From assembly GCF_006345805.1 (NCBI RefSeq), contig NC_043006.1:29636001-29700000 (forward strand): a stretch of 64,000 bases of DNA, in the 5' to 3' direction. A program made the position numbers and the translations under genes. This document shows, one piece after another, positions 14,732-40,377 of the stretch; position 1 is the first letter of the stretch; each line of letters starts with the position of its first letter. A model generated the notes under the pieces. That model was not told where the DNA came from, did not search any database, and was given only the letters and a program-made list of their open reading frames with translations. The DNA is from Octopus sinensis. Taxonomy: Eukaryota.

Positions 14732-14778
<47 letters not shown>

Positions 14779-18722: not shown

Positions 18723-18724
18723 CA

Positions 18725-18757
<33 letters not shown>

Positions 18758-18885: not shown

Positions 18886-19405
18886 TTAAAATTATGAGTT
18901 TTGCTGAAGTTTTATATTTTCCTGTGGTTATAGTTACTGCAAATTCATTTATTAATTCTTTTCATATCAGATTTAATGCTTAATGGCCACAACATCTTAA
19001 CATTAAGATTCCCCAACAGTTGCCTTATTCTACTTTGTATCCTGTTTTTACTTTTGATTGGATTTTAAGATTTGATTGTGAAAATAGAATTAAATCTCTT
19101 TAATAAATAAGTTCCAATTAACAGTTGTGAAAACTTCAAATAAATTATCGAATGATTTCTGTATATGTATTTCTAGCATGTATGCAGATATCATGACACT
19201 GGTTTAAATTCAGGAATAATACTTGATCCAGAACTGTTTTCTTCATATGCAGGTTGCTAATTTTTATGTGGACTGTTATTGTGAAAGTTTTAAAAATCTC
19301 TATTTCCATCTTAAAGGACAGAAAAATTGAATAGCAGTTTGTTAGGTAAGTAATAAAAAGTTAAAATGAGTTAATAAAATATGCATAAATAATGAAAATA
19401 CATAC

Positions 19406-19596
19406 CATCTGTGGAATTGTACACTTTTCCCAACTGAGCAAAAGTGTCTAAAGTAACCGGACGGTTGATGACTATGTGATCAGCAACTACAATCAAAGAG
19501 GAATTGGTGATATATGGCCCTAAAGACTCATAGAGGCTTACAAAGGCTTGATCATGGCTAAAACCTCCACACTTGAAGTCAAGACCAACTGAACAA
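19406..19596 (-). CDS. Exon: end of WSC domain plus start of a putative PKD/Ig-like domain (CSVGLDFKCGGFSHDQAFVSLYESLGPYITNSSLIVVADHIVINRPVTLDTFAQLGKVYNSTD)
   Basis: Acceptor ttttcttttctttacag|, donor GATG|gtatgt; 191 nt, phase 2->1. C..C.....CGG....SLY completes the WSC consensus. The PKD-like assignment of the rest is inference. Confidence 0.9.
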
Positions 19597-21787
19597 CTGT
19601 AAAGAAAAGAAAATATGTAAAATTTCTTCATGAAGAATATTTGATGTATGTGAAGATGAGAAGAAATCTATTTTATTTTTGGGAAGGTAAGGATATTAGA
19701 TTTAGAATCATTAACTGGTGGTGGTAGATTTTTGTCTTTGATTCCTGACAGCAGTAACAAACATTGATAAAGTCGGTGGAAATGTTACTACCTTTTCTCA
19801 ATAAACCTGTCTTCCATTATAATTATAATTATTGAATTTGTAGTTTGATTAATATTAAGTGTTACTTTAGAGAAACAGAAGACAACATATCTCAGGTGAT
19901 GTTCAGTACTTTCAGTTATATACCAGAAACCAGATCTAATAAACTTGTATTCTGTTAGAAAGCTGAAAGACTTTTCAATTGATTCATTAGTCTTAGTTCA
20001 TGATTCCTAAGACCTCCAATTAGAACTGATGTTATCTAGGGTTCCATTTCCCATACCCTAAATATCTTTTGCTCTTAGATTTTATACTTCCATACATTTC
20101 AATTCGTTTTTGCATAGGATTCCTGTCAGGCAACAGAGAACCACTGACAACTTGCTGGATTCAATTTGGCTTGTTTTAAAGACATTGGCAAACTGTTCAT
20201 TAACAACCAGTTATTCATTCATGCTGTCATTTAGACTATCATTAAGTAAACCAAATAAAACTAAGGCTAATCTTAACCCTACAGACAACATAGTGAATAT
20301 GTTTTCCTTTCACTTCTTTCTGAGAGAATTTTACAATACCAAAAAAAAACATTTCTAAGGAAAATGACTTGAGACCTTGTTGATGTTCTCAAGTCTTCCA
20401 CCTTTTTTTTTTTTTACATCTTTCTTTTATTTCTTGTTCTGAGTCCATATATTTCAGCAACATTCCCTCAAGTTTTTTCAAATACTTTCATCAGTCCAAT
20501 GAGTTGGCCCATTTTTTTCTTTTTATTCTTCAAAGAAATCCTGTTATTTGTCTTGAAGTAATTTGTAGCTAATGACTGCTGCCACTATTTCTTGATCACT
20601 ATTTATGGGGTTAGGTTCATTGAAGCAAGTTAATTATTGTTTTTTTTTTTTTGCCCTGTTAAGACCTTTCACAAGTGATAGGGCACATACACACCTCATA
20701 GCCACAGAGAAAATTCAACTGGTTCACCCCTCTTCTATAGTGCCATACAAATATTATTAAACATTAGATTTCATTTTGTGTTTTTCAGAAATTAGATGGA
20801 TAATGGTGGTACCATTTGAATATTTTAGAACTTGGTTAAAATACTGGTTACATCCATGGGGTTTGAACTCTGGACATTTATAGCCATTAGTTAACTACAG
20901 TTACCATTCAACCACCACATTTAGTATTTCGTTTCAAAAAGCACAACACTTTTAAAACATCACAGCCACATTCTAAGTTGATCAAATAACAGCCTAAAAG
21001 ACAGTTACTGACATTTAATGTTACTCTGGTTTCTTTACATTTATTAAAAACAAAACTTTAAGTTTCGGCACAATAAGGAACATCAAAACACACAGTTTTA
21101 TCAAAGGCAGATGTTAAAGCCATTCTGAAAGGAATTAAAAGTTGACATAGAGCTAAATTCAAGATGCAGCTTATTATTGTTGAATTAAATCTCCCCAACC
21201 TTTTATAATATATGCCTGCATTGGTTCAAGAATAAATATGTTCACCATTAAATTACTGCAAACAACCAAGTGTTGCTTTAATCTAATCTGCATCTAATTA
21301 ACAATCTAATTAGATATTTTTATGATGTAATTCAGAACATATTTTGATTTGGGAACCCAGGAAAGAGAAATGGCTTAGAATTCTAGCTGGTTCAACAAGA
21401 GGTAAGACGATTAGCTTCAATATACTTCGCCTTGTTTTAGGAGAGGATATTTCAACTAAAGATTCTTTTTTTTTTTTTTGCAATTACGTAAAGGGGCCAC
21501 ATTTTAATTAAATACAATAAAATGGTTTAACAAAGATGACGTGATGTGGATAGGCTTTCAGTAGAAATTGATTTTAATGCTCAAGATTAGATTAAACATG
21601 AAATTTTAGAAATATTTTTATTGCAGTTTTGAATATTACTGAACAATCCTCCTCCTCCTCCTCCTCCTCCTCCTCTGCCGCCGCCACCAGCAAATCACAT
21701 CTCGTCATATTTCAGTCTGCTCCAATAACACACTCAAAATAATTATCTCATGATAATTAAATGTGAAGGATGTAGTTAAACTCCATT

Positions 21788-22133
21788 TGTTTGGAGGCTG
21801 AGTGTGTTTGGAAGCTGAGTGTGTTTGGAGGTTGAATGTGTTTGGAGGCTGGGTGTATTTGGAGGCTGAGCCTGTTTGGAGGCTGAGCATGTTTGAAGGC
21901 TGTGGGTGTTTGGAGGTTGAGTGTAGTTGGAGGCCGAGTGTGTTTGGAGGCTGAGTATGTTTGGGGATTGAGCCTGTTTGGAGGTTGAGTGTATTTGGAA
22001 GCTGAGTGTGGTTGGAGGCTGAGCGTGTTTGAAGGCTGAACCTATTTGGAAGCTGAGTCTCTTTGGACGCTGATCCTTTTTAGAGGTAGAGTGTGTCTGG
22101 AGGCTGACTGTGTTTGGAGGTCGAATCTGTTTG
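21788..22133. repeat. 17-bp minisatellite, 20 units (consensus TGTTTGGAGGCTGAGTG)
   Basis: Units stay in register from 21788 to 22127 (20 x 17) with substitutions only. Confidence 0.97.
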
Positions 22134-22201
22134 TATAAGGCATTTATTATTGATGCAGCAGATTTAAAATTTAAATATTAAGAAAAAACATGACACTTTA
22201 C

Positions 22202-22297
22202 CTTTCGTCACAAGCCGATAATTGTTCTTCTGATAAATTGATGGTAGAATTTGTACATAGACATTTGCTGGAATTTGACATTCCGGCGAGAGTATAT
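22202..22297 (-). CDS. Exon: middle of WSC domain (YTLAGMSNSSKCLCTNSTINLSEEQLSACDES)
   Basis: Acceptor tttttcatttatag|, donor AAAG|gtaaag; 96 nt, phase 2->2. The GY-x-xAG..C-x-C pattern is WSC-like. The correct frame differs from the ORF-track 22164..22613 frame. Confidence 0.9.
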
Positions 22298-22538
22298 CTA
22301 TAAATGAAAAATTTTGAAAAATAAAAATAAACTGCAATATAATTAGGCATATAATAAATGGCATCATATTTAAGGTTTCATAAAATAAAGAAATAGTCTT
22401 TAATAACATGTCAGCTCTTAAACAAACAGTCACATGTAAATTCTTTAACTTAAGTAGCACTTGTTTGATAACCAAGGAAGAATTGCAAAACAACGCAGAG
22501 GTAGACAGGCAAACAAGATAGATGTTATCTCTCTCTAC

Positions 22539-22582
<44 letters not shown>

Positions 22583-22959
22583 GGGGTGAGAGACTCTGTA
22601 TGTGTGTGTCCAATCCACTGAATCCTGTTTAACCATCCAACCCATGCCAGCATGTAAAGCAGATGTAAAAATGATAATGGTGACAATGATATTATATATT
22701 AGGGTTTTTCTTCTTTTTTTTTCTCCCGTTTTTTTTTTCTTTTCTTTTCAAGAGAAATATAATGTCCAGTATGTTGGTGCCATCAACTTCTCTTTCAAGC
22801 ATCATTAGTTGTGAACTTATGCTTTTGTTTTTTCGCATTTTGTTCTTCACCATACAAACATCTATCTATGCACATGAAGCCAGAATGCTCTGCTGGATGG
22901 GTAATGTCAGTGTGCATGCATGAGCAAGTGTAAATGATTTAAGAAGAAAACTGGGTATA

Positions 22960-23400
22960 AGAGGTATCAGATGTTGTGTGCAAGAGAGAAGACTGTGCTG
23001 GTTGGGTCCTGTGATGCATATGGATGAAGACAGCTCTAATTGCAGAGGGTATCTGGGAAAAGGCTAGACCCAGGAAGACGTGGGATAAAGTGGTGGGCTG
23101 GATCTTCAGAGGCTGGATCTCACTCAGGAAATGACAAGGGATTGGGAGATGTGGCGATTTGCTGTTTCTGAAAAGATATGCCAAGCTAAGTAAAATCACT
23201 ATCTTCCATCCATAGAGGATTGTTTTTTCAGGTGCCACATCAAAAGTACCCATGCACCCATGCTGGCACTGTGTAAAGTCACCGGTGACACATAAAGAGC
23301 ACCCAGCACACTCTGTTAAGTGATATTTTATTTTAATGATCCCATAGCAATGTAAAGCAAAGTTGAAGATGGCAGGATTTGAACTCAGAACATGAGTCAA
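22960..23400 (+). mobile_element. RTE ORF2 C-terminus plus family B 3' UTR piece, followed by a family A fragment
   Basis: ggctagacccaggaagacgtggga (GRPRKTW); matches 44760, 47330 and 58620. Confidence 0.7.
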
Positions 23401-23699
23401 AACAAATATTGAAATATATTTTTTTCTCATGTGTCACTGCTGTCGCAGTGGCTGCAGCAATCTCTTTATAACTGGACACAAGATCTTGAAGGGATTCAAT
23501 AAAAGACGATGTTAAGCTGAAGCGGGAACTGACAAGTGTGGGTGGAGGGTGGGGCCATTTCTATAAAGACAAGGGAACAATGAAAGACTATACAATTAAA
23601 GTGAGGACAAGTTGATAATTTATAAAAACGCAAATAATTACATTGGAATAAATTAAAAAGATAAAACAAGATAAATTAATTAAAATAAGATGTAATTTA

Positions 23700-24200
23700 G
23701 AATGCAGGCTAAAACAGAAACCCATTCTGAGTGAGAAACAATTGGTTAGATCAAGTCAGAACGCATCAAGTCATTGTCTGTTATTGCTTATCCAGCATCT
23801 CCCGTCTCTTAAAAAGTACCTGTAACACATTTCCTGACTCTGTTGTAATTACAAACAATCCAGGTTCTTACCATTCACCTGTTTTTCTCTACTGTAGTAT
23901 CTGTCTATTATTTTTACCAACATCCTGTCTTTTGAGTGTCCCCTACATTCCAAACCCAGTTGCTTCCCAGTCCTCAACAGATTTCTGTAATATTTCTTGC
24001 ACCACAAACATGGGCTGATCCTGCCTGGTTCAAAGGCCAAGAAATTTTAATCCTCTTTTTGTTTGTCGTTCTGACCATGACCATCTTCCTTGTCGCTTTT
24101 TGCTCTTTCCCATTTGGGTTCCCTCTTCTTTTTGGAGTCCCCTTCTCATTTTCCTCTTTGTATTCCCATAATCATTATCTCCCTCTCATCACAACAATAG
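23700..24200 (-). mobile_element. Decayed Gypsy pol fragment
   Basis: Minus-strand remnant PIVSHSEWVSV, like the Gypsy RT I.PV..SEWA.P motif; many stops. Confidence 0.35.
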
Positions 24201-24669
24201 AGTGATGGCATGTATGTGTAAGTGTGTGTTTTTGACCCTCACCAACACTTGATGACCAATGTTGGTTTATTTATGTCCCTGTAACTTAATGGTTTGGCAA
24301 GACAGACTAATAGAATAAGTACCAGCCTTCAAAAAAAAAAAAAAAAGTTCTGGGGTCAATTTATTTGATTAAAATTCAGTGATGCTATCTTTTGGGGGGG
24401 TTTTTTATGTTGTTTGTGCAAATGTTTTTGTTTGCTGAGAGAGTGCATGTCTGGTCAACATTTTGTATTGAATGTCAGCTAAAAAAGAAGATATTTTTAC
24501 AAAATGTCATTTTTACAGTAAAAAGTTATAAATGACAACCTTCGTCTCCTTGAGTAATAATTCCACACAACAAGACACCAGAATACAGTTTTTTGCAAAA
24601 TATCAAAATGTAATCCAAACACCAGAGCCTAAATAAAGACATCTTGCAAAGAAGGCAAGAAACAAGAGA

Positions 24670-24870
24670 ATAATGATTTCAAATTTTGACACAAGGCCAG
24701 CACATTCAGGGTGGTCGCTAGCCAAGTACATTGACTCCAGTACATGACTGGTATTTATTTCATCAACTCTGAAATTATGAAAGGCAAGGTAAAACTCATC
24801 AGAATTTGAACTCAGAACACAAAGACAGATGAAATACCACCAGGCATTTTGTCTGGCATGTTAACAATTA
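24670..24870 (-). mobile_element. Family A SINE copy
   Basis: Same core and B-box-like segment as other copies. Confidence 0.8.
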
Positions 24871-25105
24871 ATTTTATCAGCTCAATGCCTAAAGAAAGAA
24901 AAAAAGAAAAATAATAGAAATAATAATGGTTTCTAAGACAGGCTTAAGACCAGAAACACAATGGGAGTGGATTTGTCAGATAAATCTCAGCCAATATTTG
25001 ACTTGTGCTATCTTGAGAGGATGAAAGGTACAGATGAACTTAACAGTGTTATTTAGATCAAGAATACAGGTGAGGATGATGATGATAACAATAGAAGGAA
25101 AACAA

Positions 25106-25142
<37 letters not shown>

Positions 25143-25144
<2 letters not shown>

Positions 25145-25411
25145 GTGACAATTAGTTGGTTGTCATAATAAAACTCAGAGTTTCAGATACCAGGGTTGAA
25201 GTCTGCTCTGGCATCTCATCAGATATTAAGACAAAACGCTATGAAAAAAAAAACGTTGAATAAAGGGAAATTACTCCAATAGGCATGGTGAAAGTAATTT
25301 GCTACGTTTTTGGACCCCACAAGAAGTAAAAAAAGATGAGATGCTGAGCAGACTTCAACCCCGGTATCTGAAACTCTGAGTTTTATTATGACAACCAACT
25401 AATTGTCACAT
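25143..25411. mobile_element. Foldback/MITE with ~77-bp near-perfect terminal inverted repeats
   Basis: atgtgacaattagttggttgtcataataaaactcagagtttcagatacc..gcatctcatc is mirrored at the right end with about 2-3 differences. Confidence 0.9.
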
Positions 25412-25689
25412 GAACTGCTAAAAATGGCAGCCAAGTCTCCTTCAAATGAAACCCTATCAAATAATAGATATGCTGAACAATGTAATCTCTGAAAGACACA
25501 CAGACAGATTGGTCATATGTGGAATATTCAATCAGAACTGATCTAATAGTCTGAAATGTAAACGGCAGAGAATTATGGAGGAAATTTAGTGAAAAGGTAG
25601 AGTTTATGAATAGGTACATCCATACAGCTGGGGATAGATAGACTTAGCCTGAATAAGAGATAGGATAGGTGTGGATGAGATATCTTTAA

Positions 25690-26030
25690 TCATACGTCCA
25701 CTCAATCAAGACTGACTTGGAAAACAACAATCTTAGTCAATAGACTTGGCAGCATAGTCGTAAAAAATCATAAAATCAAAAGATCTTTTCAGATTGATAT
25801 CCTCACATCCCAAAATATCAGAGAGACAGAAAAACAATTGAAGTACAAAGATTTAGAGACAAATACTTTCAAAAACATAGGAGATGGATGCAGCAGTATC
25901 ACCATAGTTATGCATGATCAAGGAATGGTGCTAAAGTTAGAAAATCAGAAAATTTTTCAATTCAAGAACTACAGAAAATAGTTTTCTTGGGGAATGCTGA
26001 CAGACTTAAGAGAATTATGTTTGCAAGAGA
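25690..26030 (+). mobile_element. Decayed R4/Dong-like LINE 3' fragment
   Basis: Remnants KYKDLE and QELQKIVFLG.A..L.RI, paralleling the C-terminus at 33573-33833. Confidence 0.55.
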
Positions 26031-26346
26031 AAAATAACATAACTAGGCTAAAGTATGCAAATTATCACTTCTACCTCTCACTCACAATACAGATACACAT
26101 AATTGCATATTGCTATATAATGGACTACCTGAGATAAATCATAATAATCTGGTATGGCATAAAAAAGAAGAGAGAAAAAATATACAAATTGCAAGATAAT
26201 GATAAATCCAGATGAAGTGTCTGGTGCATCAAACAGGAAATTTAGTTTCAGTGAAACAACTACAACACACTGAAGCTAAACAATGTAGGACTCCACATAG
26301 AAACAAAAATCTTGAGAAAATCATCCAGAATCATAGCAGCAATAAA

Positions 26347-26368
26347 AGGGTTAGGGTTAGGGTTAGGG
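26347..26368 (+). repeat. Short interstitial (TTAGGG)n
   Basis: aggg ttaggg ttaggg ttaggg. Confidence 0.9.
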
Positions 26369-27111
26369 TCACATGACTTGTTTCAAGTGGAAGAAAGAAT
26401 GGTGACAATATTGACGCTGTAAGCCAAACATACACATATGTACACCACCAACAAATACACAAAATGTTAAATAAGTCACCAAGTGAGGGTTTATTTGCAA
26501 CAAAAAGATATTTATAAAAACATGCTAAGACTATGTTAAATTACCCTTTAGGAATAAACCAATATGGGAATTTTAATTCAGTCGAATTTCCCTCAAATTA
26601 CAACTTAGTGTCTCAAAAAACAGAGGTAGAATACATGGGTTTAGTTGTAAAGCCCCAAATGTGAGAGGAAGCTGGGAGATAAAGCTGGAAGATTTTTGGT
26701 TAGGGTTAATCTAGGGTTAAAGGATCACAATCGCAATAAGAAACTGAAGAACTTGTAGAGGTGAAATGTCAAAGCAACTCACTTATGATAGAAAATACCA
26801 AGAAGCTTAGAAAGAAGAGAAATGGACAAGGATTAAACCCCAGGAAGTTCTTAGGGTTTTGTGTAGCATCCAGATATTTCCCACAGTAGAATGTAATACA
26901 AATTATACCTTATAGAATTTGGAGAAACAATCATCCAAATGTCAAGCTGAGAACGCCAATTATACTCTTTCAAATGTAAGGAGATATCAGAGAAAAAAAA
27001 AGAAACAGATACTCAAAAGCAGAATTATTATCCCTAAAAGAAGATATTCAGAACACAGCAGCAGTAAAATACCAATTATGTAATGGAAATAATACTTGCA
27101 AAACTTACTAA

Positions 27112-27550
27112 TATACATGGTCGTGTGGTAAGAAGTTTGCTGCCCAACTACATGATTCCAAGTTCAATATCCCTACATGGCACCTTGAGCAAGTGTCTTC
27201 TACTACAGCCTCAGGCCACCGAAAGCCAGGTGAAAGAGGCCTGTCGTATGTGTGTGTGTGTGTGTTTGTGTTGACCACCACTTGACAACCAGTGTTTGTG
27301 CATTTAATAACCTTTAGCACACTGTAGGTGCATTATGTCACCATATGAGCTTTCTCCCCTGTAGTAATAGGACAGTGGAAGGGGAAACAATTCTAGAGAA
27401 AATGCAATGTGCAAAAGGTTAGATATCCCTAATCTAGCAGTTCAGCAACAGAGACCGATTGAATAAGTACCAGTCTTAAAAAGAAGACAAGTTCAGGGGT
27501 AAATTAGTTTGACTAAAATTTCTCAAGGCAGTGCTCCAGTATGGCCACAA
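27112..27550 (+). mobile_element. Family C SINE, interrupted
   Basis: gtggtaagaagtttgc...ggcaccttgagcaagtgtcttctac...gctccagtatggcc. Confidence 0.75.
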
Positions 27551-28391
27551 GGAAAGGAAATCTTGAACAAATAGAAATGAAAATGGCACACTTAATAAAA
27601 CCTGAAGAAATGTTTTAAGATTAAAAACAAAAGATGCAGAGATAAACAAAAATGTATCCATAAAGTGAAACAAAGATGAAAATTAGAAATATAAATGAAT
27701 AGGCATTAGTTATGTGGTTCCATACTTTATCTCACAACCACATGGTTCTGGGTTCAATACTACGGTATGGCACCTTGGAAAAGTATCTCCTACCAAAGTT
27801 TTGGATTAACCAAATACTGAGAGTGAAATCTAATCAACAGAAACTGAGTTGAAGCCTATCACCATCACCATCATCATTATCATCATCATCGGCATTTTTA
27901 TATCAACTTTCCAGACAGATAGGGGTTGGACAGTTCATCATATTCTAGTCTTATTTGCAGTTGTTGTCTTCTGAAATAAAGGGCCATGTCTCTATTTCGA
28001 ACAGTTGCTATAATCGGACATCCTTCCTAACATTGACTACTTTACAGAATATACTGAGCACCTTCTATCATGTCCACAACACTGGACAGGTAGGTTGTTA
28101 TATACTCAGCCACACTGAAGTGACCCCTTGATCATTTCTTACTTCTTCGCAGACTAATGTGGGTCTATTTCATCAAGGTACCAACACTACTGAGGTTGTC
28201 AGGTACCCGACCCACTATGTTTTGACATCTGTTTATTAAAGGCAACAGGCCCAGGAGAGTAAATAGAAGGGAGAGCAAATGACAGGAATAAAACGTGAGG
28301 GTAAAGGAAGTGGGATTACAAAAGGGATACAATGTAGGAAGGGGAGGGTTTGATGTGAAATGGTATGCATATGTATGAGAGAGAGTGTGTG

Positions 28392-28435
<44 letters not shown>

Positions 28436-29786
28436 GGAGAGACTAAGAGAAAGTGTGTGTGTGTATGTGTGTGACAGAAACAGAGAGGAAGGAGAGAGAG
28501 AGTGTACGTGATAGATAGAGAGAGAGAGAGAGAGAAAGAGAAAAGTGTGTGTGTGATATAGAGACAGAGAAAGTGTGTGTATATAATAGAGAGAAAGAGA
28601 ATGTGTGTGTGTGTTTGTGTGTGTGTGAGTGTGAGTGCATGTGACAAAGAGAGTGAGTGTGTGGTAGAGAGAGTGTGAGGGTGGATGTGTTTATATGAAT
28701 ACAGGTCTCAACAAAGAATTGTATTTTTGTCCCTCGAGGCCTAATAACTTAGTGGTTTGACAAAGAGATTGATAGAATAAACAACAGACTGCAATGAGTG
28801 TGAGTATGACTAGCTGAACCATTAGCAATGACCTGAAGCTGTTAATTCCAGGCATTCCAAAGAGTTAAAATGCTCAGCAAAGACAAAGAATTTGGGGTAG
28901 AAAATGTGCCAGAGTCATCATATCTCTTATTATAAAAGGCAGATTTTATCTGCCTCCCTTTGGGAGTTATACAAATCTACAATATAGGATTTCTTCAATT
29001 ACAATTTACCTAGCATTTTTAAGAGTACAATGCATCGCATCATGCCAGGTCCAGTTTTTAAAATTTAAACTCCAATTAAGCAAAATTTACAGAAAACTCA
29101 CATTCTGGTGTGTGTGTCAAATGCTTTTCTTAGTCTGGTTTACACCACACGCAAACGCACACACACAGTGTGCAACGAATAAAGTGAAACTAGATGTAAT
29201 ATTTGTTTCTGTCTATCACGCTGATAGATACATGAGTAAAATGTATGGGAAGCTAACACATAAGAGTGAGTGAAAATGTTCTTGGAAGAGAGTAAATAGC
29301 CAGAGAGAGTGATTTGAGGAAGACTTTACATTAAATAACCGTAGTGGCTTGTGTTAGTAATAAAGTAAACATACACTCATACATACATACATACATACAT
29401 ATATACATACACACACACACATACACACACACATACATACATACACACACACATACATACATACACACATACATACATACATATACATACATATACATAC
29501 ATACATACACACACACACACATACACACACACAGTATTGAAGCTTGAGAACAATCAGATACATTTGCAACACATCTGTTGAAAATATTATTGTTCACACA
29601 CATACATATACATATATACATACAGACAGACAGACAGATAGACACACACACACACACACATGATCCAGCATGGCCACAACCTCAAGGCTGAAACATATAA
29701 AAGAATAACAGAATATAAATGTGTGCATGTGTGTGAGAGAGAGAGTGTGTGTGTATATGTATGTACGTATGTATGTATATATATAT

Positions 29787-30376
29787 AATAATGCGGTTTT
29801 TTCAACAGCTTGAACTAAAAGTCAGAGGGGAATGGGATAAACTACTTATATTAAATTGCTATAAAAGCAGGTAGTAATTTTATCTTGTCCTTATTCATAG
29901 TGCAAGTTTTGAAGAGTGCATTTCGATTTTAACAGCTATTTTTTTCAAAGCTATATTGGAAGTAACAAAGGAGCATATTTGGCATATTTTGCTTTATGAG
30001 TTCAATAAAGACAACAACGCAACGGAAAGTACAAGAAATATTAATGCAGTATATGGGGATTGGACAATAAGCGTAAGGCAGTGTCAATGGTGGTTCCAGA
30101 AATTCCGAGCCATAAACTACAGCCTAGAAGACGAGTCTCATCCTGAAAGATCTGTAGAACTCGACAAGGACATCCTGAAAACCCTGGTGGAACAAAATCT
30201 CATCGTAACTGTTGAGGAACTAGCAGAGAAGCTTGGATTTGGTCATTCAACCATTCATTGAGACCTGTGTGCTATCGGAAAAGTCAGCAAATTGGGTCAA
30301 TGGGTTCCTCACGAACTTTCCGAGTCTAATTGCATGCAGAGAGTGAATGTATGCTTTTCTTTGCTGTCACATCTCA
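29787..30376 (+). mobile_element. Mariner 5' half: partial TIR, HTH region to WVPHEL; truncated
   Basis: ORF 29956-30261 MEVTKEHIWHILLYEF..WFQKFR..LEDE..; GKVSKLGQWVPHEL downstream; aatgcggtttttt resembles a mariner TIR end. Confidence 0.9.
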
Positions 30377-30396
30377 CCACTACTGCGCTATGTATG

Positions 30397-31033
30397 TCTA
30401 TATATATAAAACTGTAGTTGTGTGAGTGTCTGTCCCCTTCGATTTAGATTCCTAACTACTCCCACATTTTGCGGTGCAGTTTAACCAAATTCGGGTAGCT
30501 TATAGTCGTGATTCATATCGAGCCCGTCTGAGTATTAGCGCGCGTCTACGATGAGTCTACGATTTTAAAAATAATTTAACATCATTTTTTATTCCATTTT
30601 AATGCATAATTTTTCGTGTGTCGATGGCGGCGGAGTTGGCGTCCACGCTCACACCTGCACCTGTGGGGAAGGGAGTGTAAGGAAATCAACGTCGTAATGC
30701 GTTGTCAAGGAGACCAGCGTTCTTTTAGAACAACGACTTCATGGCTTGAAGACACCAAAACAGAAATGGCTAAGAAAGCGTCTACATGAGTCTACGATTT
30801 TAAAAAAAATTTACCATCGTTTTTTTTCCATTTTAATGCATTTTTTCGCTATTATATAAGGGAAGTAACTCTCTAAAAATGTCTACGATGAGTCAACGAT
30901 TTTTAAAAAAATTTACCATCATATTTTTTCCATTTTTAATGCATTTTTTGCTATTTTTTGGCTATAACTCTCTAAAAATGCTTATATAGTTATTTCCCTT
31001 ACAAACCCGAGCAACGCCGGGCGATACTGCTAG
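30397..31033 (+). mobile_element. Non-autonomous Helitron
   Basis: 5' TCtatatatataaaa; 3' hairpin cccg-agcaacgc-cggg (31006-31021) then CTAG|T; CpG-rich, with internal repeats. Confidence 0.85.
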
Positions 31034-31159
31034 TATAAGATAAGGAGGGAAAAGAGAAGTAAAATACGTCAGTTGTAAAGCATGGAGTAAGACATTAAGG
31101 GACATTAAGGGACCTAAAAAACACACAAATACCTGGGAGATAGAATGATGAAAGAGGAA

Positions 31160-31400
31160 ATTAAGAAAGAGCATGTAAAAAGTGCCTGTGCTGGTGACCC
31201 CTAAAAAGCACCCAGTCCACTCTGTAGTGGTTGGCATTAGGAAGGGCATCCAGCCATAGAAACCATGCCAAAACAGACAAATGGAGCCTAGTGAAATTCA
31301 CCAGCCTTGCCAGCTCCTGCCAAATTGTCCAACCCATGCCAGCATGGAAAACGGACATTAAATGATGATGAGGATGATGATGATGAAGATGATGACATGT
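31160..31400 (+). mobile_element. Family B copy
   Basis: aaaagcacccagtccactctgtagtggttggcattaggaagggcatccag...(gat)n. Confidence 0.85.
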
Positions 31401-32269
31401 GACATCAGTGCTATGAATGAAATAAATAGGTAAAAGGAGAAGCACTAAATCACAAGGCAATAGCAATGTAGTTGTTGATGCTGTTGTTGTCACATCATGA
31501 ACTGAAATATGAGGGAGATGCTGAGAGTGGACACCAATGCCAGGACACTGTGGTATACAGAGAAGACTAGCCAAAGATGCCAACTGGCTTTACACATGGA
31601 ATTATTAAATCAAACAGGTAGGACTCCAATGACAAAACCACAACTCAGCTGCAAGAATATTTCCCAGAAAGCAAAAGGCCGATGCATATTGTATATAATC
31701 ATGGGAAAATAAAAAAGTGGTTATTCTTTACAAAGAAATATCAAACTTCTGAATTGAGCTAATGCTGGGGAAAGTACTGCAGCACAGAATGAACCAACAA
31801 AGGACAGAGGAATTTAATAATAAAAAAAAAAAAGATATGAAAATTATTATGTCAAAATAATAGCATGAATGGGTAAATCACTTGAAGTAAATATCCACAA
31901 TCGATTAATAAACCTGACAGAGACATTACCAGCATCCATCTGTGAGTGACTAAATGCTGAACCCAGAGGTTGTTTACCATCGAGGCATAAGAAATAGAAT
32001 AAGAGGATCATTCCTGCATTGGTATCACCAAACCTGACATTACCAAAAAATCTTCAAAAACAAGATGATAAAGCTCCATACCAACCTCATGGATACCTAA
32101 ACTATCTTGTCATAAGGTACCTGATACTAACCAAAATAATAAAAGCTATGCCACAGTAAAATGTAGGAGAATAACACGGTAAAGTAACCGAAATTGTTGG
32201 AATGACAACACTAAAACAGCAGTGAACACAAACAGGAATTTTGGTTAAAATAATGATAATTATATTTCT

Positions 32270-32465
32270 TCTACAATAAGGCACAAGGCCTGAAATTTTG
32301 GTGGAGGGACTAGTCAATTGCTTTGACCCAGTGTTCAACTGGTACTTATTTTGTCAATCCCTAAGAGGGACGGAAAGTAAAGTTGACCTCAGCAACATTT
32401 GAATTCAGAAGAAATGGTTCTAATCATTTTAACCGGGATACTAATGCTTCTGCCAGCTCACTGCT
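32270..32465 (-). mobile_element. Family A SINE copy adjoining (TAA)n
   Basis: Same core; head runs straight into a (taa)n tract at 32467-32572. Confidence 0.8.
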
Positions 32466-32486
32466 TTAATAATAATAATAATAACA

Positions 32487-32543
<57 letters not shown>

Positions 32544-32574
32544 TAATAATACTAATAACAATAATAATAATAAA

Positions 32575-34030
32575 ATGATAGAAACATCCAACGTTAATCT
32601 TGATCAATAGAATGTCATAAGGGAGTTAGAACCCAACGAAGAGCTACAAATACCTAAGGGAATTTGAAAGTGATTTACAGTTTCAATTTTATTAACTGGT
32701 CAATTACTGAAATCTGTAATCTTGACAGAAAAATACGAAAATTGTGGGAAATGAATGGAATGCACCTCTCTAAGGCAGATACAGAACTACTTTACCGACC
32801 AAGAAAAGAGGGTGGTTTTGGACTTTTACAACTGGAATTAACAATGAAGACTGCCACAATTGACCGAAGCACTTACCTGAAAAACCCTGAATGACTGGAT
32901 GCTAAAACTTGTTTTTAAACATGAAAACAAGAAAACAGCACACTCAGTAAAAAAACAGGAAAAGAAATATCTAAGTGAATTCCAAATACACAAATCCCAG
33001 AATTAGATGTACTAGAACAAGCATAGAAAAAGCTAAACATATGAAAGCCCTTGCTAAAACTGCTGCCTTAGATATTCTTACTGATAAATGGCAAGAAAAA
33101 CCTCTCAATGGCAAATACCCAAAGAGAGCTAATAATGCTGATATTGACAAAGCCCTTACCCATCAATGGCTTAAAATCAAAAACAGAAGGGTTTATCATA
33201 GCAGCCCAAGATCAATGCCTATCTACAAGGAACTACCAGGCCAATATATTAAAGAACGGCAGCAGACCAACATGTTGTATATGTAAACAACAAAATGAAA
33301 CCATCAATCATGTTGTTTCCATATGCAGTCTTCTTGCACCTACAGAGTATCTTAGCAGGCATGATAGAGAAGCACAGTATATTCACTGGGTAATTTGCAA
33401 TGACTTGGACCATGATAAAAACCAGTGGGAACACAAACCACTGCCAGTGCTTGAAAATGATCACATCTCACTCCTTTGGAACTTCACCGTTCAAACTGAC
33501 AGAAAGATAGATGCAAATATGCGAGACGTTATATTGAAGGATTTCAGATAAAAATCATGCCTCCTCATCAATATGACTGTCCCAATCAACATAAATGTAT
33601 CTGTCAAGACTTACCAAAAACTGAGCAAGGATAAAGATCTTGAAATAGAAATTGACAAAATGTGGTACCTCCAGACTAAAACAATACTTATTGTCATAGG
33701 TGCCCTAGGAATGATAGCAAAAGGGGCCGATTGCTACTTAGCTCAAATACCAGGAAATCCAAAAATGGAAGAAATTCAAAAAATAGTGCTCATGGAAACT
33801 GCTCGTATCCTACGCAAAATATCATTGATGTAATCCCCAAAACATTTTAATCTGTAAAGTGTTAAAATATTTTTAAATGTACATAACAGCAAACACTTTT
33901 TATTGTTATCTCAACTTCAGATTATCACTTTATAATCAAATTGCTTTTCAAACAAACTTTTAACTGACTTATGTTTTGACAGACATTCTCTAGAATAATA
34001 CTCTGTGCAAAACCAAAAAAATAGCACCCT
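32575..34030 (+). mobile_element. R4/Dong-clade non-LTR retrotransposon (restriction-like endonuclease), 5'-truncated pseudogene
   Basis: ORFs 32664-33833: WQEKPLNGKY, KTEGFIIAAQDQCLSTRNY, C..C...ETINHVVS.C (CCHC), YLSRHD, LLWNFTVQTDRKI, KDLEIEIDKMW..TK..LIVIGALG; stops and frameshifts. Confidence 0.9.
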
Positions 34031-34610
34031 AGTCATAATACCAACTTGAACTTCTAACTTGTTGTCTCTTGAAGTCTCTGGGTGAGACTTGGAGTCAACT
34101 TCTGATCTTAACTGATTGGAAGTGTTATCATGTACATAGTTTTGTCTTAGTATAAAAGATGGGCTACAGCAAATATTCTGCTTAATACCACAGATTTGCT
34201 TGTCAGTTGTTTGACCTTAACCAGTTGGGCATGTCTCTAAGTGGCTGACAATATGTACAACTCTGATCATGAGCAGAAGTAGTGGGGGATCATCATAGCT
34301 GTGTGTTGAAAGGAATTCATCTTTGGAAACATGGGTATTTTGTTCAACATCCTAAAACAACCCTTATTCAGGGAACTTTTGTGTGAGATGGGCTACTCAA
34401 CCTGAAGAAAATTCTAACTGGGCCCAGCCACAAGGTCATGCACTGTTTATCTTGATATCAGATCACGATGTCATGCACATATGGTTGAGATGCATGCACC
34501 TGGTGTACCCTTATCAGATGGATAGTCATGGTGGGTATACTGGGCTTCTTATATTTTTACCCCAGTGTCACTTTGATGGGATGGCATGCACTGCTCTCTC
34601 TCTCACTCAA
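34030..34610 (+). mobile_element. Family E repeat with (AAT)n tail (LINE 3' UTR or SINE)
   Basis: The reverse complement of part of it recurs at 51770-51970, and a fragment occurs at 57490-57535. Confidence 0.7.
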
Positions 34611-34621
34611 TAATAATAATA

Positions 34622-34670
<49 letters not shown>

Positions 34671-34689
34671 TATTATTATTATTATTATT

Positions 34690-35503
34690 ATTTCTACTGA
34701 AGGCACAAGGCCTAGTTGATCATGTTGTCCCCTGTGTTTCACTGGTATTTAATTTATCAAATCCAAAAAGATGAAAGGCAAAGTCAACCTCGGCAGAAAT
34801 TGAACTCAGAACATAAAGATGGACGAAATACCTTTCAGCATTTTGCCTGGTGCACTAACAATTCTGCCAGCTCATTACCTTAATGAAAATAATAATAATA
34901 ATTTCAAGTTTTGGCACAAGGCCAGCAAATTCAGGGTAAGGGACTAGTTGATTACATCAACCCCAGTACTCAACTGGTACTTGGTTTATTGACTTCCGTA
35001 AGCCACATAGCTCAGTGGTTAGAGTGTCGGTCTTACAATCATGAGCTTACAAGTTTGATTCCCAGACCGGGCTACATGTTGTGTTCTTGAGCAAGGCACT
35101 TTATTTCACATTGCTCCAGTTCACTCAGCAGTAGAAATGATTTGCAATGTCACTGGTGCCAAGCGGTATTGACCCCTTTGCCTTTCCCTTGGATAACATC
35201 GGTGGCACAGAGAGGGGAGGCCGGTTTGCATGGGTGACTGCTGGCCTTCCATAAACAATCATGCCCACACTTGTGACTTGGGGCGGGGGGGGGGAACTGT
35301 TTAGGTGCAATCCCATGGTCATTCATGACCAAAGTGGATCTGTACTCTTTTACCCTTTAAGGATGAAAGGCAAAGTCAACCTTGGCGGAATAAGAACTCA
35401 GAATTTAAAAATGAATGAAATGTCACAAAGCATTTTGCCCAGCATGCTAACGATTCTGCCCGTTCACCACCTAGTAATAATAACAACAATAATAATAATA
35501 ATA

Positions 35504-35535
<32 letters not shown>

Positions 35536-35770
35536 CAACAACAATAATAATAATCCTTTCTACTATAGGAACTAGTCCTGATATTTTGGAGGAGGGGCCA
35601 GTTAATTACATCAACCTCAATGCTCAACTGGTTCTGTATCTTATCAACCTTAAAAGGATGAAAGGCAAAGTCAACCTCAGCAGAATTTGAACTCAGATTG
35701 TAGAGCTGAAAGAAAGCATTTTGTCCAGTGTGTTAAGGATTCTGCCAGCTCATTGCATTAATTTGCTCTA
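34690..35770. mobile_element. Stack of four family A SINE pieces (minus) with a nested family F tRNA-SINE (plus, ~34998-35340), separated by (TAA)n
   Basis: Repeated aaggatgaaaggcaaagtcaacc cores; family F head tagctcagtggttagagtg...agtttgattccc. Confidence 0.8.
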
Positions 35771-35819
35771 ATAATAATAATAACAATAATGATGGTGATG
35801 ATGATGATGATTGCTCCTG

Positions 35820-36480
35820 CTGGTTTTGACGTATGAATGTTTAAAGGAGAGGATTTAAAGATAGTAAGAAAGCAAAAGTCACTAAGAAGCTGCATCTGTT
35901 TGTGATGGATTCAGGAATGTAATTTGAGTCCAGAAATGGATTTTGCTATGAAGTCACAATGGAGACATTGATGATTTTGATTTTGCCTGGGATTGGGCGA
36001 GTGTGTCTGTTGGTTGCGGGACATAGTTCTTTTATTGTCCTTTTTCTTCAACTCAGACTGTCTCGAAGCATCGTGACACATTTTATGCCATGCAGGTCGA
36101 TCTGGCACTGTACGACAATGTGAAGGGTGTATTTGGTCCAAGAAAGAGCGGCACAGAACCTATTCTCTCTAACGATGGAACAAAACTCTTAAGTAGCAAA
36201 GATGAAATTCTGGAAAGATGGGCAAAACACTTTAAATCTGTATTAAATCAAGAATCCACTGCTAATCCTGAAGATATCAATGAAATCCTTCAGTGGCCTA
36301 TAATTGAAGAACAAGCAGAAAATCCTTCCTAGGAAGAGATAAGTACTTCTATCAGAAAGCTTTTTCCATGGTAAAGCACTTGGACAAGACAGTATTCCCA
36401 TAAATGTGTGGAAGCATGTTGGCAAACAAGCTGTAAGTAAGCTGTGCAAATTGGTCTGCTTGATGTGAGAAATGATGTTT
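35820..36480. mobile_element. RTE (BovB-like) LINE pieces in opposite orientations
   Basis: Minus ORF 35911-36141: DRPAWHKMC..C..C...S.SGLKLH (C-terminal zinc finger). Plus ORF 36090-36332: FGP..EILERWAKHFKSVLN (pre-RT region). Confidence 0.85.
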
Positions 36481-36499
36481 GTTCCTCAACAGTTCAATT

Positions 36500-36710
36500 A
36501 TAATAATCCTTTCTACTATAGGCACAGGGCCTTAAATTTGGGAGAAGGGGACTACGACCGCAGTGCTTAAATGGTACTTATTTTATTGAGCCCAAAAGGA
36601 TGAATGGCAAAGTCGACCTTGGCAAAATTTGAACTCAATGTAAAGGTAGATGAAATGCTACTGAGCATTTTGTCTGGTGTGCTAACAATTCTGCCAACTC
36701 ATTGCAGCAG
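36500..36710 (-). mobile_element. Family A SINE copy
   Basis: ataataatcctttctactataggcac tail and core. Confidence 0.85.
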
Positions 36711-36799
36711 CAGCAGCAGGAGGGGGGAATGGATGTAAAGTTTTAGCACCAGTAAAGTATAAATCAAGACAGGACAGAGTTCACCAATACTGATAAATA

Positions 36800-37080
36800 T
36801 GTTGGCATTTCAAAATCAAGTAACTGTTAACAGGTAGTACAAGCATCACCCTGAAGCTGTAACTGAGGGAGGAAATGTAATGATTCTTTGGGATTTTCCA
36901 GTACTTACAGACAGAACTATCATAGCTAATAAACTGGTTATTGTTGCAAAAGATTTGTCTATTTATTGATTGACATGAGTATCTCTTGTGATCATAATAC
37001 TGTAGCAAAGGAATTGGACAAGCTCAGAATATAGAAAGATTTGCTATTGAAATCAAAAACTGTGTGGCATCTCCTATTTA
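36800..37080 (+). mobile_element. Decayed R4/Dong-like LINE fragment
   Basis: ILWDFPVLTDRTIIANK..LLIDMS remnants, paralleling 33470-33600. Confidence 0.6.
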
Positions 37081-37219
37081 GAAAAAATGAATTTATTTAT
37101 CATCAAAGAGGTCATTATTTTTACATTCATAATATTGTTAGTATTTTAATATTATTAGTATTTTATTGTCAGTATTTGTAATTTTAGTATTTTAATATTG
37201 TAAGTATTTTAATATTAGA

Positions 37220-37430
37220 TTAAAATTTTGGCACAAGGCCAACAAGTTCAAGGGAGGGTAAATCAATAACATCGACCCCGGTACTGAAATGGTACTTATT
37301 TTATCAACCCCAAAGGGATGAAAGGTAAAGTCGACCACAGTGGTATTTGAACTCAGATCATAAACACAGATGAAACACTGCTAAGCATTTTGCCCAGCAT
37401 GGTAACAATTCTGTCAACTCACCACCTTGT
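37220..37430 (-). mobile_element. Family A SINE inserted in a degenerate ~17-bp AT-rich repeat
   Basis: ttagtattttaatattg-like units on both sides (37130-37220, 37428-37470). Confidence 0.8.
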
Positions 37431-37552
37431 TAGTGTTTTAATATTGTTAGAATTTTCATATTGTTAGCATTCTAAAATATATGCTGTATTTCTTGTAAAA
37501 TCTCTGTTATTACTATTAAATCAGAGATAAAAAAAAAAAGTTCTAAACTTAC

Positions 37553-37679
37553 CCCTGCAGGAAACATTTTTGAGTGCAGTCTAATAGATTCCAATTGCCT
37601 GAGAGCCATTCTGATAGACTTGATGAGATCTCCTTTACACTATAACAGCCTTGATACCAGCTGTTTGGTGAGACAATAG
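37553..37679 (-). CDS. Exon: N-terminal half of WSC domain (xIVSPNSWYQGCYSVKEISSSLSEWLSGNWNLLDCTQKCFLQG), polycystin-1-like candidate gene
   Basis: Acceptor ccttttgtcttttccag|, donor CAGGG|gtaagt; 127 nt, phase 1->2, open frame. Y-x-G-C and C-x3-C match the start of a WSC domain. GG + A of the next exon gives G-YTLAG. Absent from the ORF track. Confidence 0.9.
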
Positions 37680-40314: not shown

Positions 40315-40362
<48 letters not shown>

Positions 40363-40377
40363 GTATGTATTTATTTA

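What the first reader, a model, noticed from the sequence alone, without database searches (positions are those of the whole stretch)
19406..37679. Hidden WSC-domain receptor gene (polycystin-1-like) split over three exons and 18 kb
Manual splicing of 37679-37553, 22297-22202 and 19596-19406 gives an uninterrupted WYQGCYSVKEISSSLSEWLSGNWNLLDCTQKCFLQGYTLAGMSNSSKCLCTNSTINLSEEQLSACDESCSVGLDFKCGGFSHDQAFVSLYES with all eight WSC cysteines, then GPYITNSSLIVVADHIVINRPVTL, a beta-rich segment. WSC directly followed by a PKD domain is the established polycystin-1 layout; Kremen (kringle-WSC-CUB) and WSCD/xylosyltransferases are alternatives. The ORF track misses one exon and misframes another. A cephalopod sensory or ciliary role is speculation.
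Basis: partly seen in the sequence, partly recalled or inferred. Interest (0 to 1): 0.7.

Follow-up and report, generated by a model that had tools for sequence, protein, structure and literature searches.

The report
Octopus WSC exons, polycystin-1-like gene start
Three small minus-strand exons really do encode a WSC sugar-binding domain, but the gene is already in the Octopus sinensis RefSeq annotation and is most likely the start of a large polycystin-1-like receptor gene, so it is an ordinary gene with an uninformative name.

Summary
Exons 37679-37553, 22297-22202 and 19596-19406 (minus strand) each have AG/GT splice sites. They splice into one open frame that passes Pfam's WSC threshold (35.7 bits against 27.8) with eight cysteines, and the predicted fold matches both solved WSC structures.

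The gene is not hidden. The peptide is 100% identical to residues 22-158 of RefSeq XP_029641411.1 (Octopus sinensis, 173 aa, gene range 157 kb). Its signal-peptide exon and last exon lie outside the window.

The polycystin-1-like call is supported only indirectly:
- Eight of the ten best single-domain relatives are N-termini of animal proteins. Two of them are long polycystin-1-like models (Tubulanus: WSC, PKD repeats, REJ, GPS, PLAT, channel; Saccoglossus: WSC, PKD repeats, REJ).
- Homology runs past the WSC domain into what scores as a PKD domain in the snail Batillaria.
- All four intron positions are shared with Lottia, Lingula and Batillaria.
- The RefSeq model stops in the middle of that PKD domain, so it looks truncated.

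The octopus segment itself gives no PKD hit, and no REJ, GPS, PLAT or membrane-span exons are in the window. I could not find the rest of the octopus gene. This is a low-interest annotation refinement.

The parts
37553..37679 (-). Coding exon (RefSeq exon 2; residues 21-63 of XP_029641411.1). It encodes the first part of the WSC domain with cysteines 1-3 (WYQGC...LLDCTQKC). Acceptor ...TTTTCCAG|, donor |GTAAGT.
22298..37552 (-). Intron of 15,255 bp between WSC exons 1 and 2. It holds transposon remnants: a mariner HTH_48 fragment at 29956-30261(+) and a LINE zf-RVT fragment at 33108-33551(+). The equivalent Lottia intron is about 0.8 kb.
22202..22297 (-). Coding exon (residues 63-95). It encodes the middle of the WSC domain with cysteines 4-6 (SKCLC...SAC). 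Acceptor ...CATTTATAG|, donor |GTAAAG.
19597..22201 (-). Intron of 2,605 bp. It contains a 17-bp tandem repeat of about 19.6 copies at 21788-22120.
19406..19596 (-). Coding exon (residues 95-159). It encodes the last two WSC cysteines (SCSV..FKCGG), the conserved S-x-Y..GPYI linker, and the first strands of the following PKD-like beta domain (IVVADHIVINRPVTLDTFAQLG). Acceptor ...CTTTACAG|, donor |GTATGT. It ends in phase 1, so the reading frame continues into a further exon outside the window.
1..19405 (-). Part of the next intron. The following RefSeq coding exon (DETAEPTGIVTFSGV) is not in the window. tblastn with full-length polycystin-1-like relatives finds no PKD or REJ exons here.
37680..64000 (-). 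Part of the intron upstream of the first WSC exon. The RefSeq signal-peptide exon (MKSYQWSVFLVVIITLDCIP) is not in the window. A frameshifted mariner-type transposase remnant lies at 40640-41505(-).
46690..46762 (-). Alternative first exon used by the O. bimaculoides model UPI00069530F5 (MVIVRDV..GIDSGDIRSLN). It has no signal peptide, sits next to a (GGT)n tract and has a weak donor (GTGTCT). It is probably an ab initio prediction artefact.

Best explanation
The three exons are real internal coding exons of the Octopus sinensis gene that RefSeq already annotates as XP_029641411.1.

**What they encode (shown).** Together they encode an extracellular N-terminal WSC domain: a cysteine-rich module with eight cysteines whose predicted fold matches the solved Kremen and yeast Wsc1 WSC structures. 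They also encode the first strands of an Ig-like PKD domain.

**What follows (inferred).** The gene is most likely the 5' end of a large polycystin-1-like receptor gene, of the type NCBI names 'polycystin-1-like protein 1' in invertebrates. The layout would be signal peptide, WSC, PKD repeats, REJ, GPS, PLAT and multi-pass membrane domain with a polycystin channel domain. The 173-aa RefSeq model is a truncated fragment that stops inside the first PKD domain. The remaining exons lie beyond the low-coordinate end of the window.

**Function (inferred from established knowledge of the family).** The WSC/PKD ectodomain binds extracellular glycan or matrix, or senses force. It is tethered to the membrane core, which pairs with a PKD2/TRPP channel, probably in ciliated sensory cells.

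**Status of each step.**
- Shown: exon structure, WSC identity and fold, purifying selection on exon 3, and orthology of the N-terminus.
- Inferred: continuation into REJ, PLAT and membrane spans in octopus, and the function.
For: **Exons and domain.**
- Splice sites and open frame.
- WSC above the Pfam gathering score.
- AlphaFold model with pLDDT 80-92 over the WSC region. Foldseek hits Kremen WSC (5FWS, E 1.6e-5) and yeast Wsc1 (7PZ2, TM 0.69, rmsd 2.5 A).
- Identity to RefSeq XP_029641411.1, gene range 157 kb.

**Closest relatives.** Ranked by best single-domain phmmer score among 1.84 billion representatives:
- Tubulanus polycystin-1-like protein 1 (4375 aa, 51.9 bits, query residues 22-159) comes first.
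- Lottia, Bulinus, Priapulus, Batillaria, Ciona, Saccoglossus and Lingula N-termini follow.
- The Tubulanus protein has WSC, 8 PKD stretches, REJ, GPS, PLAT, Polycystin_dom and PKD_channel. The Saccoglossus protein has WSC, PKD repeats and REJ. The Priapulus and Batillaria fragments have WSC plus PKD.

**Homology beyond the WSC domain.**
- A shared motif CGG..S-x-Y..GPYI..PVxL follows the WSC domain.
- The Batillaria post-WSC segment passes Pfam PKD (24.5 bits against 23.5, profile positions 3-80 of 80).
- The last 15 aa of the RefSeq model align with the 'F-x-W-x-v-G' strand of that domain and then stop. The relatives continue with the rest of the domain.

**Conserved gene structure and selection.**
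- All four intron positions map to the same alignment columns in octopus, Lottia, Lingula and Batillaria.
- Exon 3 is conserved (94.8%, no indels, 6 synonymous to 3 non-synonymous changes) against introns at about 85%.

**Literature.**
- WSC occurs in human PKD1 and in sea-urchin SpREJ6, 7 and 10 (PMC1934368).
- An annelid PKD1-family protein together with PKD2-1 is required for ciliary mechanosensation (PMC6294549).
Against: - The octopus post-WSC segment has no Pfam PKD hit of its own. A profile of the segment finds nothing in the PDB.
- No PKD, REJ, GPS, PLAT or membrane-span exon is in the window.
- No other gene is called within 10 kb of the RefSeq gene.
- Two further protein searches failed to find an octopus continuation.
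- No spliced transcript-derived protein for this gene turned up among Logan assemblies. The 90% cluster holds only the RefSeq and UniParc models, so I did not see junction support from reads.
- Two fungal-type WSC proteins (P0097, P0137) score within the same range as the animal relatives over the WSC part alone.
Confidence: 0.7

Rival explanations
1. The gene is exactly what RefSeq says: a stand-alone, small (173 aa) secreted WSC-domain protein, or a genuine short secreted isoform. It would act as a soluble lectin-like factor with no membrane part.
For: - The RefSeq model XP_029641411.1 has a signal peptide, a WSC domain and a short tail.
- No other gene is called within 10 kb on either side.
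- Several other genomes also carry short WSC-only models of this type: Lottia 306 aa, Lingula 234 aa, Ciona 332 aa.
Against: - The model ends in the middle of a domain that continues in every relative.
- Exon 3 ends in phase 1 and the homology runs on.
- The short models in other genomes look like fragments. Two are flagged partial, and L003 and L004 contain runs of N.
- The two long models, Tubulanus and Saccoglossus, join this N-terminus to PKD repeats and REJ. The Tubulanus model continues through PLAT and the channel domain.
Confidence: 0.22
2. It belongs to another animal or fungal WSC family: Kremen (kringle-WSC-CUB), WSCD1/2 (WSC plus sulfotransferase), or a Wsc1-type wall-stress sensor as the RefSeq name 'ARB_07867-like' suggests.
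For: - Foldseek's best structural hits are Kremen and yeast Wsc1, but these are the only solved WSC structures it returned.
- Two fungal-type proteins are among the top ten single-domain hits.
Against: - The signal peptide leads straight into the WSC domain, so there is no kringle.
- Pfam finds no CUB, sulfotransferase or other domain.
- A PDB sequence search does not reach Kremen even at E 10.
- The segment after the WSC domain is not a Ser/Thr-rich stalk plus membrane helix. It is a beta segment shared only with the animal polycystin-1-like N-termini, and the intron positions are shared with them too.
Confidence: 0.04
3. It is a chance ORF combination or a decaying pseudogene fragment with no function.
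For: No transcript-derived protein was found in the Logan assemblies. The exons lie in very long, transposon-filled introns.
Against: - The frame is intact with all eight cysteines, and all six splice signals are canonical.
- The protein is 97% identical between two Octopus species.
- Exon 3 is clearly more conserved than its introns, with mostly synonymous change and no indels.
- Intron positions are conserved across phyla.
Confidence: 0.03

Closest known systems
Invertebrate 'polycystin-1-like protein 1' proteins with an N-terminal WSC domain (Tubulanus polymorphus XP_074659507.1, 4375 aa; Saccoglossus kowalevskii XP_006819354.1 / XP_077867281.1)
   Same: - The signal peptide is followed directly by a single WSC domain.
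- Both have the conserved CGG..S-x-Y..GP(Y/F)I linker and the first strands of the next beta domain.
- The Tubulanus protein gives the best single-domain score (51.9 bits over query residues 22-159).
   Different: - Identity is only about 30%.
- For octopus, only the first roughly 160-173 residues are known.
- PKD repeats, REJ, GPS, PLAT and the channel domain were not shown for the octopus gene.
Vertebrate polycystin-1 (PKD1)
   Same: It has WSC followed by a PKD domain in the extracellular N-terminus. In human, mouse and zebrafish, PKD1 is the only PKD-family protein with a WSC domain (PMC5318412).
   Different: - PKD1 has leucine-rich repeats before the WSC domain. The octopus protein goes from signal peptide straight into WSC.
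- The GPS-PLAT region of the Tubulanus relative is closest to frog PKD1L1 proteins (44-49% identity), not PKD1.
- Vertebrate PKD1L1 itself lacks WSC (PMC5318412).
Sea-urchin receptor-for-egg-jelly proteins SpREJ6, 7 and 10
   Same: They are PKD1-family members that carry a WSC domain (PMC1934368).
   Different: I made no direct sequence comparison. Their roles are in sperm, and orthology is unknown.
Mollusc and brachiopod orthologous gene-model fragments (Lottia XP_009049449.1, Batillaria KAK7500821.1, Bulinus KAH9524660.1, Lingula XP_013410298.1)
   Same: - Same domain order.
- Same four intron positions, with the WSC domain split over three exons and the third carrying the start of the PKD domain.
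- Same post-WSC motif.
   Different: Their introns are much shorter (about 1 kb in Lottia against 2.6-15 kb here). These models are themselves incomplete.
Kremen1 WSC domain and yeast Wsc1 cysteine-rich domain (PDB 5FWS, 7PZ2)
   Same: Same fold (Foldseek E 1.6e-5; TM 0.69 and rmsd 2.5 A to 7PZ2).
   Different: The surrounding domains differ: kringle/CUB in Kremen, Ser/Thr stalk plus membrane span in Wsc1. Sequence similarity is marginal or undetectable.

Membership tests
WSC domain (Pfam PF01822) | Score above the Pfam gathering threshold over the full model | tested here: met
   35.7 bits against 27.8, E 1e-8, model positions 1-82 of 82. RefSeq P0003 gives the same result at 35.0 bits.
WSC domain (Pfam PF01822) | Eight conserved cysteines | tested here: met
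   C at WYQGC, LLDC, TQKC, SKC, LC, SAC, ESC and FKC in the spliced peptide. C75, C77, C92 and C96 are invariant in the orthologue alignment.
WSC domain (Pfam PF01822) | WSC fold | tested here: met
   The AlphaFold2 model has pLDDT 80-92 over residues 30-110. Foldseek hits Kremen WSC 5FWS (E 1.6e-5) and Wsc1 7PZ2 (TM 0.69, rmsd 2.5 A).
Polycystin-1 (PKD1-like) receptor family | PKD (Ig-like) domain(s) in the ectodomain, here directly after the WSC domain | tested here: inconclusive
   - The octopus post-WSC 54 aa give no Pfam hit.
- The aligned Batillaria segment passes PKD at 24.5 bits against 23.5, and the Saccoglossus segment is weak at 19.1 bits.
- The model shows beta strands at 124-131 and 144-150 with pLDDT of about 72.
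- Only about half of the domain is encoded in the window and the RefSeq model.
Polycystin-1 (PKD1-like) receptor family | REJ domain | not testable with these tools
   It is not in the window (tblastn). Octopus DNA beyond the window could not be fetched because the gene range is too long.
Polycystin-1 (PKD1-like) receptor family | GPS/GAIN cleavage motif, PLAT domain and 11 membrane spans with a polycystin channel domain | not testable with these tools
   These are not in the window. Searches for an octopus continuation found nothing. They are present in the Tubulanus relative.
Polycystin-1 (PKD1-like) receptor family | Closest relatives by sequence are family members | tested here: met
   The top single-domain hit is Tubulanus polycystin-1-like protein 1. 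Eight of the top ten are animal N-termini of this type.
PKD1 in the strict sense (vertebrate polycystin-1) | Leucine-rich repeats N-terminal to the WSC domain | tested here: not met
   The RefSeq N-terminus is a 20-aa signal peptide followed at once by the WSC domain. Pfam finds WSC only.
Kremen | Kringle before and CUB after the WSC domain | tested here: not met
   There is no kringle or CUB hit. The signal peptide abuts the WSC domain. There is no sequence hit to Kremen chains in the PDB at E 10.
Fungal Wsc1-type sensors (source of the RefSeq name ARB_07867-like) | WSC followed by a Ser/Thr-rich stalk and a single membrane helix | tested here: not met
   The post-WSC segment is a conserved beta segment shared with the animal proteins. 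The fungal-type hits P0097 and P0137 diverge there.

The most novel reading that the evidence does not exclude
Octopus makes, from the 5' end of a polycystin-1-like locus, a genuine short secreted WSC plus half-PKD protein (the 173-aa RefSeq product) alongside or instead of the full receptor. That would be a soluble lectin-like decoy or ligand derived from a polycystin gene. Alternatively, the WSC module has been detached from the receptor in cephalopods.
Probability: 0.12. Interest if true: 0.45.

Novelty: already known. Interest (0 to 1): 0.15.

Why it matters
The main value is for annotation quality.

- A cephalopod gene carries a name borrowed from a fungal protein ('ARB_07867-like'). It is most likely the detached first exons of a giant polycystin-1-like receptor gene.
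- The same fragmentation is seen in the Lottia, Lingula, Batillaria and Bulinus models.
- Joining these N-termini to their receptor bodies would give correct domain architectures for studies of polycystin evolution. WSC-bearing PKD1-family members appear widespread in invertebrates, whereas in vertebrates only PKD1 keeps the WSC domain.
- It would also give a candidate for ciliary mechanosensation studies in cephalopods.

Nothing here challenges current knowledge.

Tried and rejected
- **Pfam on the octopus post-WSC peptide alone** for a PKD hit: none, even at E 10.
- **Profile of the post-WSC segment** (8 orthologues) against PDB sequences: no hit at E 10.
- **phmmer of the RefSeq protein against the PDB**: only yeast Wsc1 at E 0.06.
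- **Exact-peptide search of the window** for the RefSeq first and last exons: absent.
- **tblastn of the Tubulanus, Saccoglossus, Priapulus and Batillaria proteins against the window** for more exons: only the three WSC exons were found.
- **Search for the octopus continuation:**
  - The full-length Tubulanus query timed out.
  - Its GPS-PLAT region returned only three frog PKD1L1 proteins and one unnamed Logan protein.
  - An alignment of the region after the first PKD domain returned only its own members.
- **Looking up P0001 (O. bimaculoides) in assemblies**: not on record.
- **DNA for the O. sinensis locus**: not retrievable because the gene range exceeds 100 kb.
- **10-kb downstream flanks of the Lottia, Lingula and Batillaria fragments**: no REJ or PLAT exons. 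The Lottia and Lingula loci contain runs of N.
- **Packing all minus-strand ORFs for a Pfam sweep**: abandoned as too costly. tblastn with relatives replaced it.
- **Rejected readings:** Kremen, WSCD, a fungal Wsc-type sensor, and chance ORF or pseudogene (see the rival explanations).

Full report
**1. The observation**

I reverse-complemented and joined 37553-37679, 22202-22297 and 19406-19596 (127 + 96 + 191 = 414 nt). Frame offset 2 is open from end to end.

Every exon is preceded by a pyrimidine-rich tract ending in AG. Every exon is followed by GT (GTAAGT, GTAAAG, GTATGT).

Pfam finds a full-length WSC domain above the curated threshold: PF01822, 35.7 bits against 27.8, E 1e-8, model positions 1-82 of 82. 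The eight cysteines are all present.

The window is AT-rich (35.6% GC), full of microsatellites and transposon debris, and clearly eukaryotic.

The ORFs that hold exons 1 and 2 are only 51 and 50 aa, and a 149-aa ORF in a different frame overlaps exon 2.

**2. It is not hidden**

A search of the 5.8-billion-protein collection returned a 162-aa UniParc protein at 97% identity, UPI00069530F5, which I take to be an Octopus bimaculoides model. Its cluster mate is RefSeq XP_029641411.1, 'WSC domain-containing protein ARB_07867-like [Octopus sinensis]', 173 aa.

The window's spliced peptide is 100% identical to residues 22-158 of that RefSeq protein, with the same three junctions.

The RefSeq gene spans 157 kb on a 105.9-Mb contig of GCA_006345805.1. 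Neither its first coding exon (MKSYQWSVFLVVIITLDCIP, a signal peptide) nor its last (DETAEPTGIVTFSGV) is in the window.

The O. bimaculoides model instead uses a first exon that is present in the window at 46690-46762(-). That exon has no signal peptide, abuts a (GGT)n tract and has a weak GTGTCT donor. I regard it as a prediction artefact.

**3. Are the exons under selection?**

A genomic contig from another octopod (Logan SRR11869394, 1.3 kb) covers exon 3 and its flanks.

| Region | Identity | Indels |
|---|---|---|
| Exon 3 | 94.8% | none |
| Flanking introns | 84-86% | 82 gapped positions |

Codon changes are six synonymous to three non-synonymous. The AG and GT signals are kept.

I found no transcript-derived protein that spans the junctions in the Logan assemblies. 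I therefore did not see read-level support for the junctions. That support rests on the RefSeq and O. bimaculoides models and on conservation.

**4. Which WSC family?**

An exhaustive HMMER search of 1.84 billion representatives gave 259 hits. Most of the high whole-protein scores come from proteins with several matched WSC stretches, which inflates them. I therefore re-ranked the hits by best single domain.

The top ten by that ranking are:
- Tubulanus polymorphus 'polycystin-1-like protein 1' (4375 aa; 51.9 bits; query residues 22-159 aligned to its residues 15-152)
- N-terminal models from Lottia, Bulinus, Priapulus, Batillaria, Ciona, Saccoglossus and Lingula
- two fungal-type WSC proteins

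Pfam on these relatives gives the following:

| Relative | Domains found |
|---|---|
| Tubulanus | WSC (23-91), 8 PKD stretches, REJ, GPS, PLAT, Polycystin_dom, PKD_channel |
| Saccoglossus | WSC, PKD repeats, REJ; clustered with a 3936-aa 'PKD1-like 1-like' protein |
| Priapulus and Batillaria fragments | WSC plus PKD |

The animal relatives align well beyond the WSC domain. They share CGG..S-x-Y..GP(Y/F)I and then ..PVxL...

**5. Is a PKD domain next?**

The octopus post-WSC 54 residues give no Pfam hit on their own. A profile of this segment finds nothing in the PDB.

The aligned segment of the Batillaria orthologue does pass Pfam PKD (24.5 bits against 23.5, profile positions 3-80 of 80). 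The Saccoglossus segment gives a weak hit at 19.1 bits.

In the alignment, the Batillaria PKD domain starts at the position of octopus ...NSSLIVVADHIVINRPVTL. The last 15 residues of the RefSeq model (..GIVTFSGV) sit on the 'F-x-W-x-v-G' strand, which I take to be the counterpart of the PKD WDFGDG motif. After that point the relatives continue with the h-T-F..G.y.i.v.v.N.. half of the domain, and the octopus model simply ends.

The AlphaFold2 model has mean pLDDT 70.8, with 80-92 over the WSC region. It shows beta strands at 124-131 and 144-150 with pLDDT of about 72.

So 'WSC followed by PKD' is supported by homology transfer, not by a direct hit. The RefSeq protein appears to be cut off in mid-domain.

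**6. Gene structure**

tblastn of the orthologues onto their own loci shows the same layout in Lottia (L003), Lingula (L004) and Batillaria (L005):
- a signal-peptide exon
- three exons for the WSC domain, the third carrying the start of the PKD domain
- an exon for the rest of the PKD domain

On the joint alignment, the four boundaries fall at columns 73-79, 121-122, 153-156 and 225-227 in every species for which that boundary was mapped.

Octopus differs only in intron size: 15.3 kb and 2.6 kb here against about 1 kb in Lottia. The octopus introns carry mariner and LINE remnants.

**7. Fold**

Foldseek against the PDB returns Kremen (5FWS and related entries, E 1.6e-5) and the yeast Wsc1 mechanosensor domain (7PZ2, TM 0.69, rmsd 2.5 A). 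This confirms the WSC fold. It cannot discriminate between families, because these are the only solved WSC structures the search returned.

At sequence level, Kremen is not reached even at E 10.

**8. What could not be shown**

- No PKD-repeat, REJ, GPS, PLAT or membrane-span exon lies in the window.
- DNA beyond the window could not be fetched.
- No other gene is called within 10 kb of the RefSeq gene.
- Three attempts to pull out an octopus continuation protein failed.
- The 10-kb downstream flanks of the Lottia, Lingula and Batillaria fragments are likewise uninformative.

Whether the octopus gene runs on into a full receptor is therefore an inference from orthologues. I put it at about 0.6-0.7.

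**9. Mechanism**

Shown:
- The N-terminus is secreted or extracellular.
- It consists of a WSC module with eight cysteines followed by an Ig-like beta domain.

Inferred from what is established for the family:
- The ectodomain binds glycans or matrix, or transmits force.
- It is coupled through REJ/GAIN-GPS to an 11-span core with a PLAT domain.
- That core pairs with a PKD2/TRPP channel, typically in cilia.

The nearest functional precedent in a lophotrochozoan is Platynereis PKD1-1/PKD2-1. Both are required in ciliated collar-receptor neurons for the hydrodynamic startle response (PMC6294549). PKD1-1 is described there as a clade separate from Polycystin-1 and PKD1L1, so this is an analogy only.

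**10. Comparison with what is known**

- In human, mouse and zebrafish, only PKD1 has a WSC domain, and it follows leucine-rich repeats (PMC5318412).
- Sea-urchin SpREJ6, 7 and 10 also have WSC domains (PMC1934368).
- The octopus protein has no leucine-rich repeats.
- The GPS-PLAT region of its best full-length relative is closest to frog PKD1L1.

The gene should be described as 'polycystin-1-like (PKD1-family), N-terminal WSC type', not as PKD1. A recent survey of cephalopod TRP channels notes many unannotated cephalopod TRPP sequences that do not resolve into the vertebrate subgroups (PMC13402157).

**11. Verdict**

- The feature is already in public annotation under a misleading fungal-derived name.
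- What this adds is a likely re-annotation: a truncated or fragmented model of a polycystin-1-like receptor gene.
- Interest is low.

Noticed in passing
window 40640-41505 (-) and 29956-30261 (+): Mariner/Mos1-type transposase remnants. HTH_48 scores 49.5 and 72.5 bits. The copy at 40.6-41.5 kb is split over at least three frames, so it is a dead element lying in the introns of the WSC gene.
   Followed up: partly
window 32664-33833 (+): LINE-type reverse-transcriptase tail. The zf-RVT hit is 25.1 bits, just under the cut-off. It is broken into several ORFs inside the 15-kb intron.
   Followed up: partly
window 21788-22120: A 17-bp tandem repeat (TGTTTGGAGGCTGAGTG, about 19.6 copies, 76% matches) starts 82 nt downstream of the exon 2 donor. 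It produces long repetitive pseudo-ORFs in several frames.
   Followed up: no
window 9126-9383 and 61405-61695: Two short arrays (about 4 copies each) of a 66-67-bp unit. By eye they look like the same repeat family in opposite orientations. They generate the odd 'ATGTEA/FYVPPAQ' repetitive ORFs.
   Followed up: no
window e.g. 1259-1438 (+), 4599-4820 (-), 30962-31249 (-), 41677-41883 (+), 58200-58454 (-): A recurring short element whose translation contains '(H)n ... FYSWMPFL(T/M)PTT'. It is probably an abundant octopus SINE-like repeat scattered on both strands.
   Followed up: no
window 46690-46762 (-): The O. bimaculoides gene model starts in a 73-nt exon here. It is next to a (GGT)n tract, has no signal peptide and has a weak GTGTCT donor. 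The O. sinensis RefSeq model instead uses a signal-peptide exon outside the window. This looks like an annotation artefact.
   Followed up: partly
L003 (Lottia), L004 (Lingula), L005 (Batillaria): The orthologous N-terminal WSC models in these three genomes, and the Bulinus protein P0102 (flagged partial; its locus was not fetched), are all short fragments. This suggests that the 5' exons of this polycystin-1-like gene are systematically split off by gene predictors. In Lottia, the exon for the second half of the first PKD domain appears to be skipped between 13550 and 20476.
   Followed up: partly
RefSeq XP_029641411.1 (covers window 19406-37679): The product name 'ARB_07867-like' is inherited from a dermatophyte fungal WSC protein. 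It is misleading for an animal gene whose closest relatives are polycystin-1-like proteins.
   Followed up: yes
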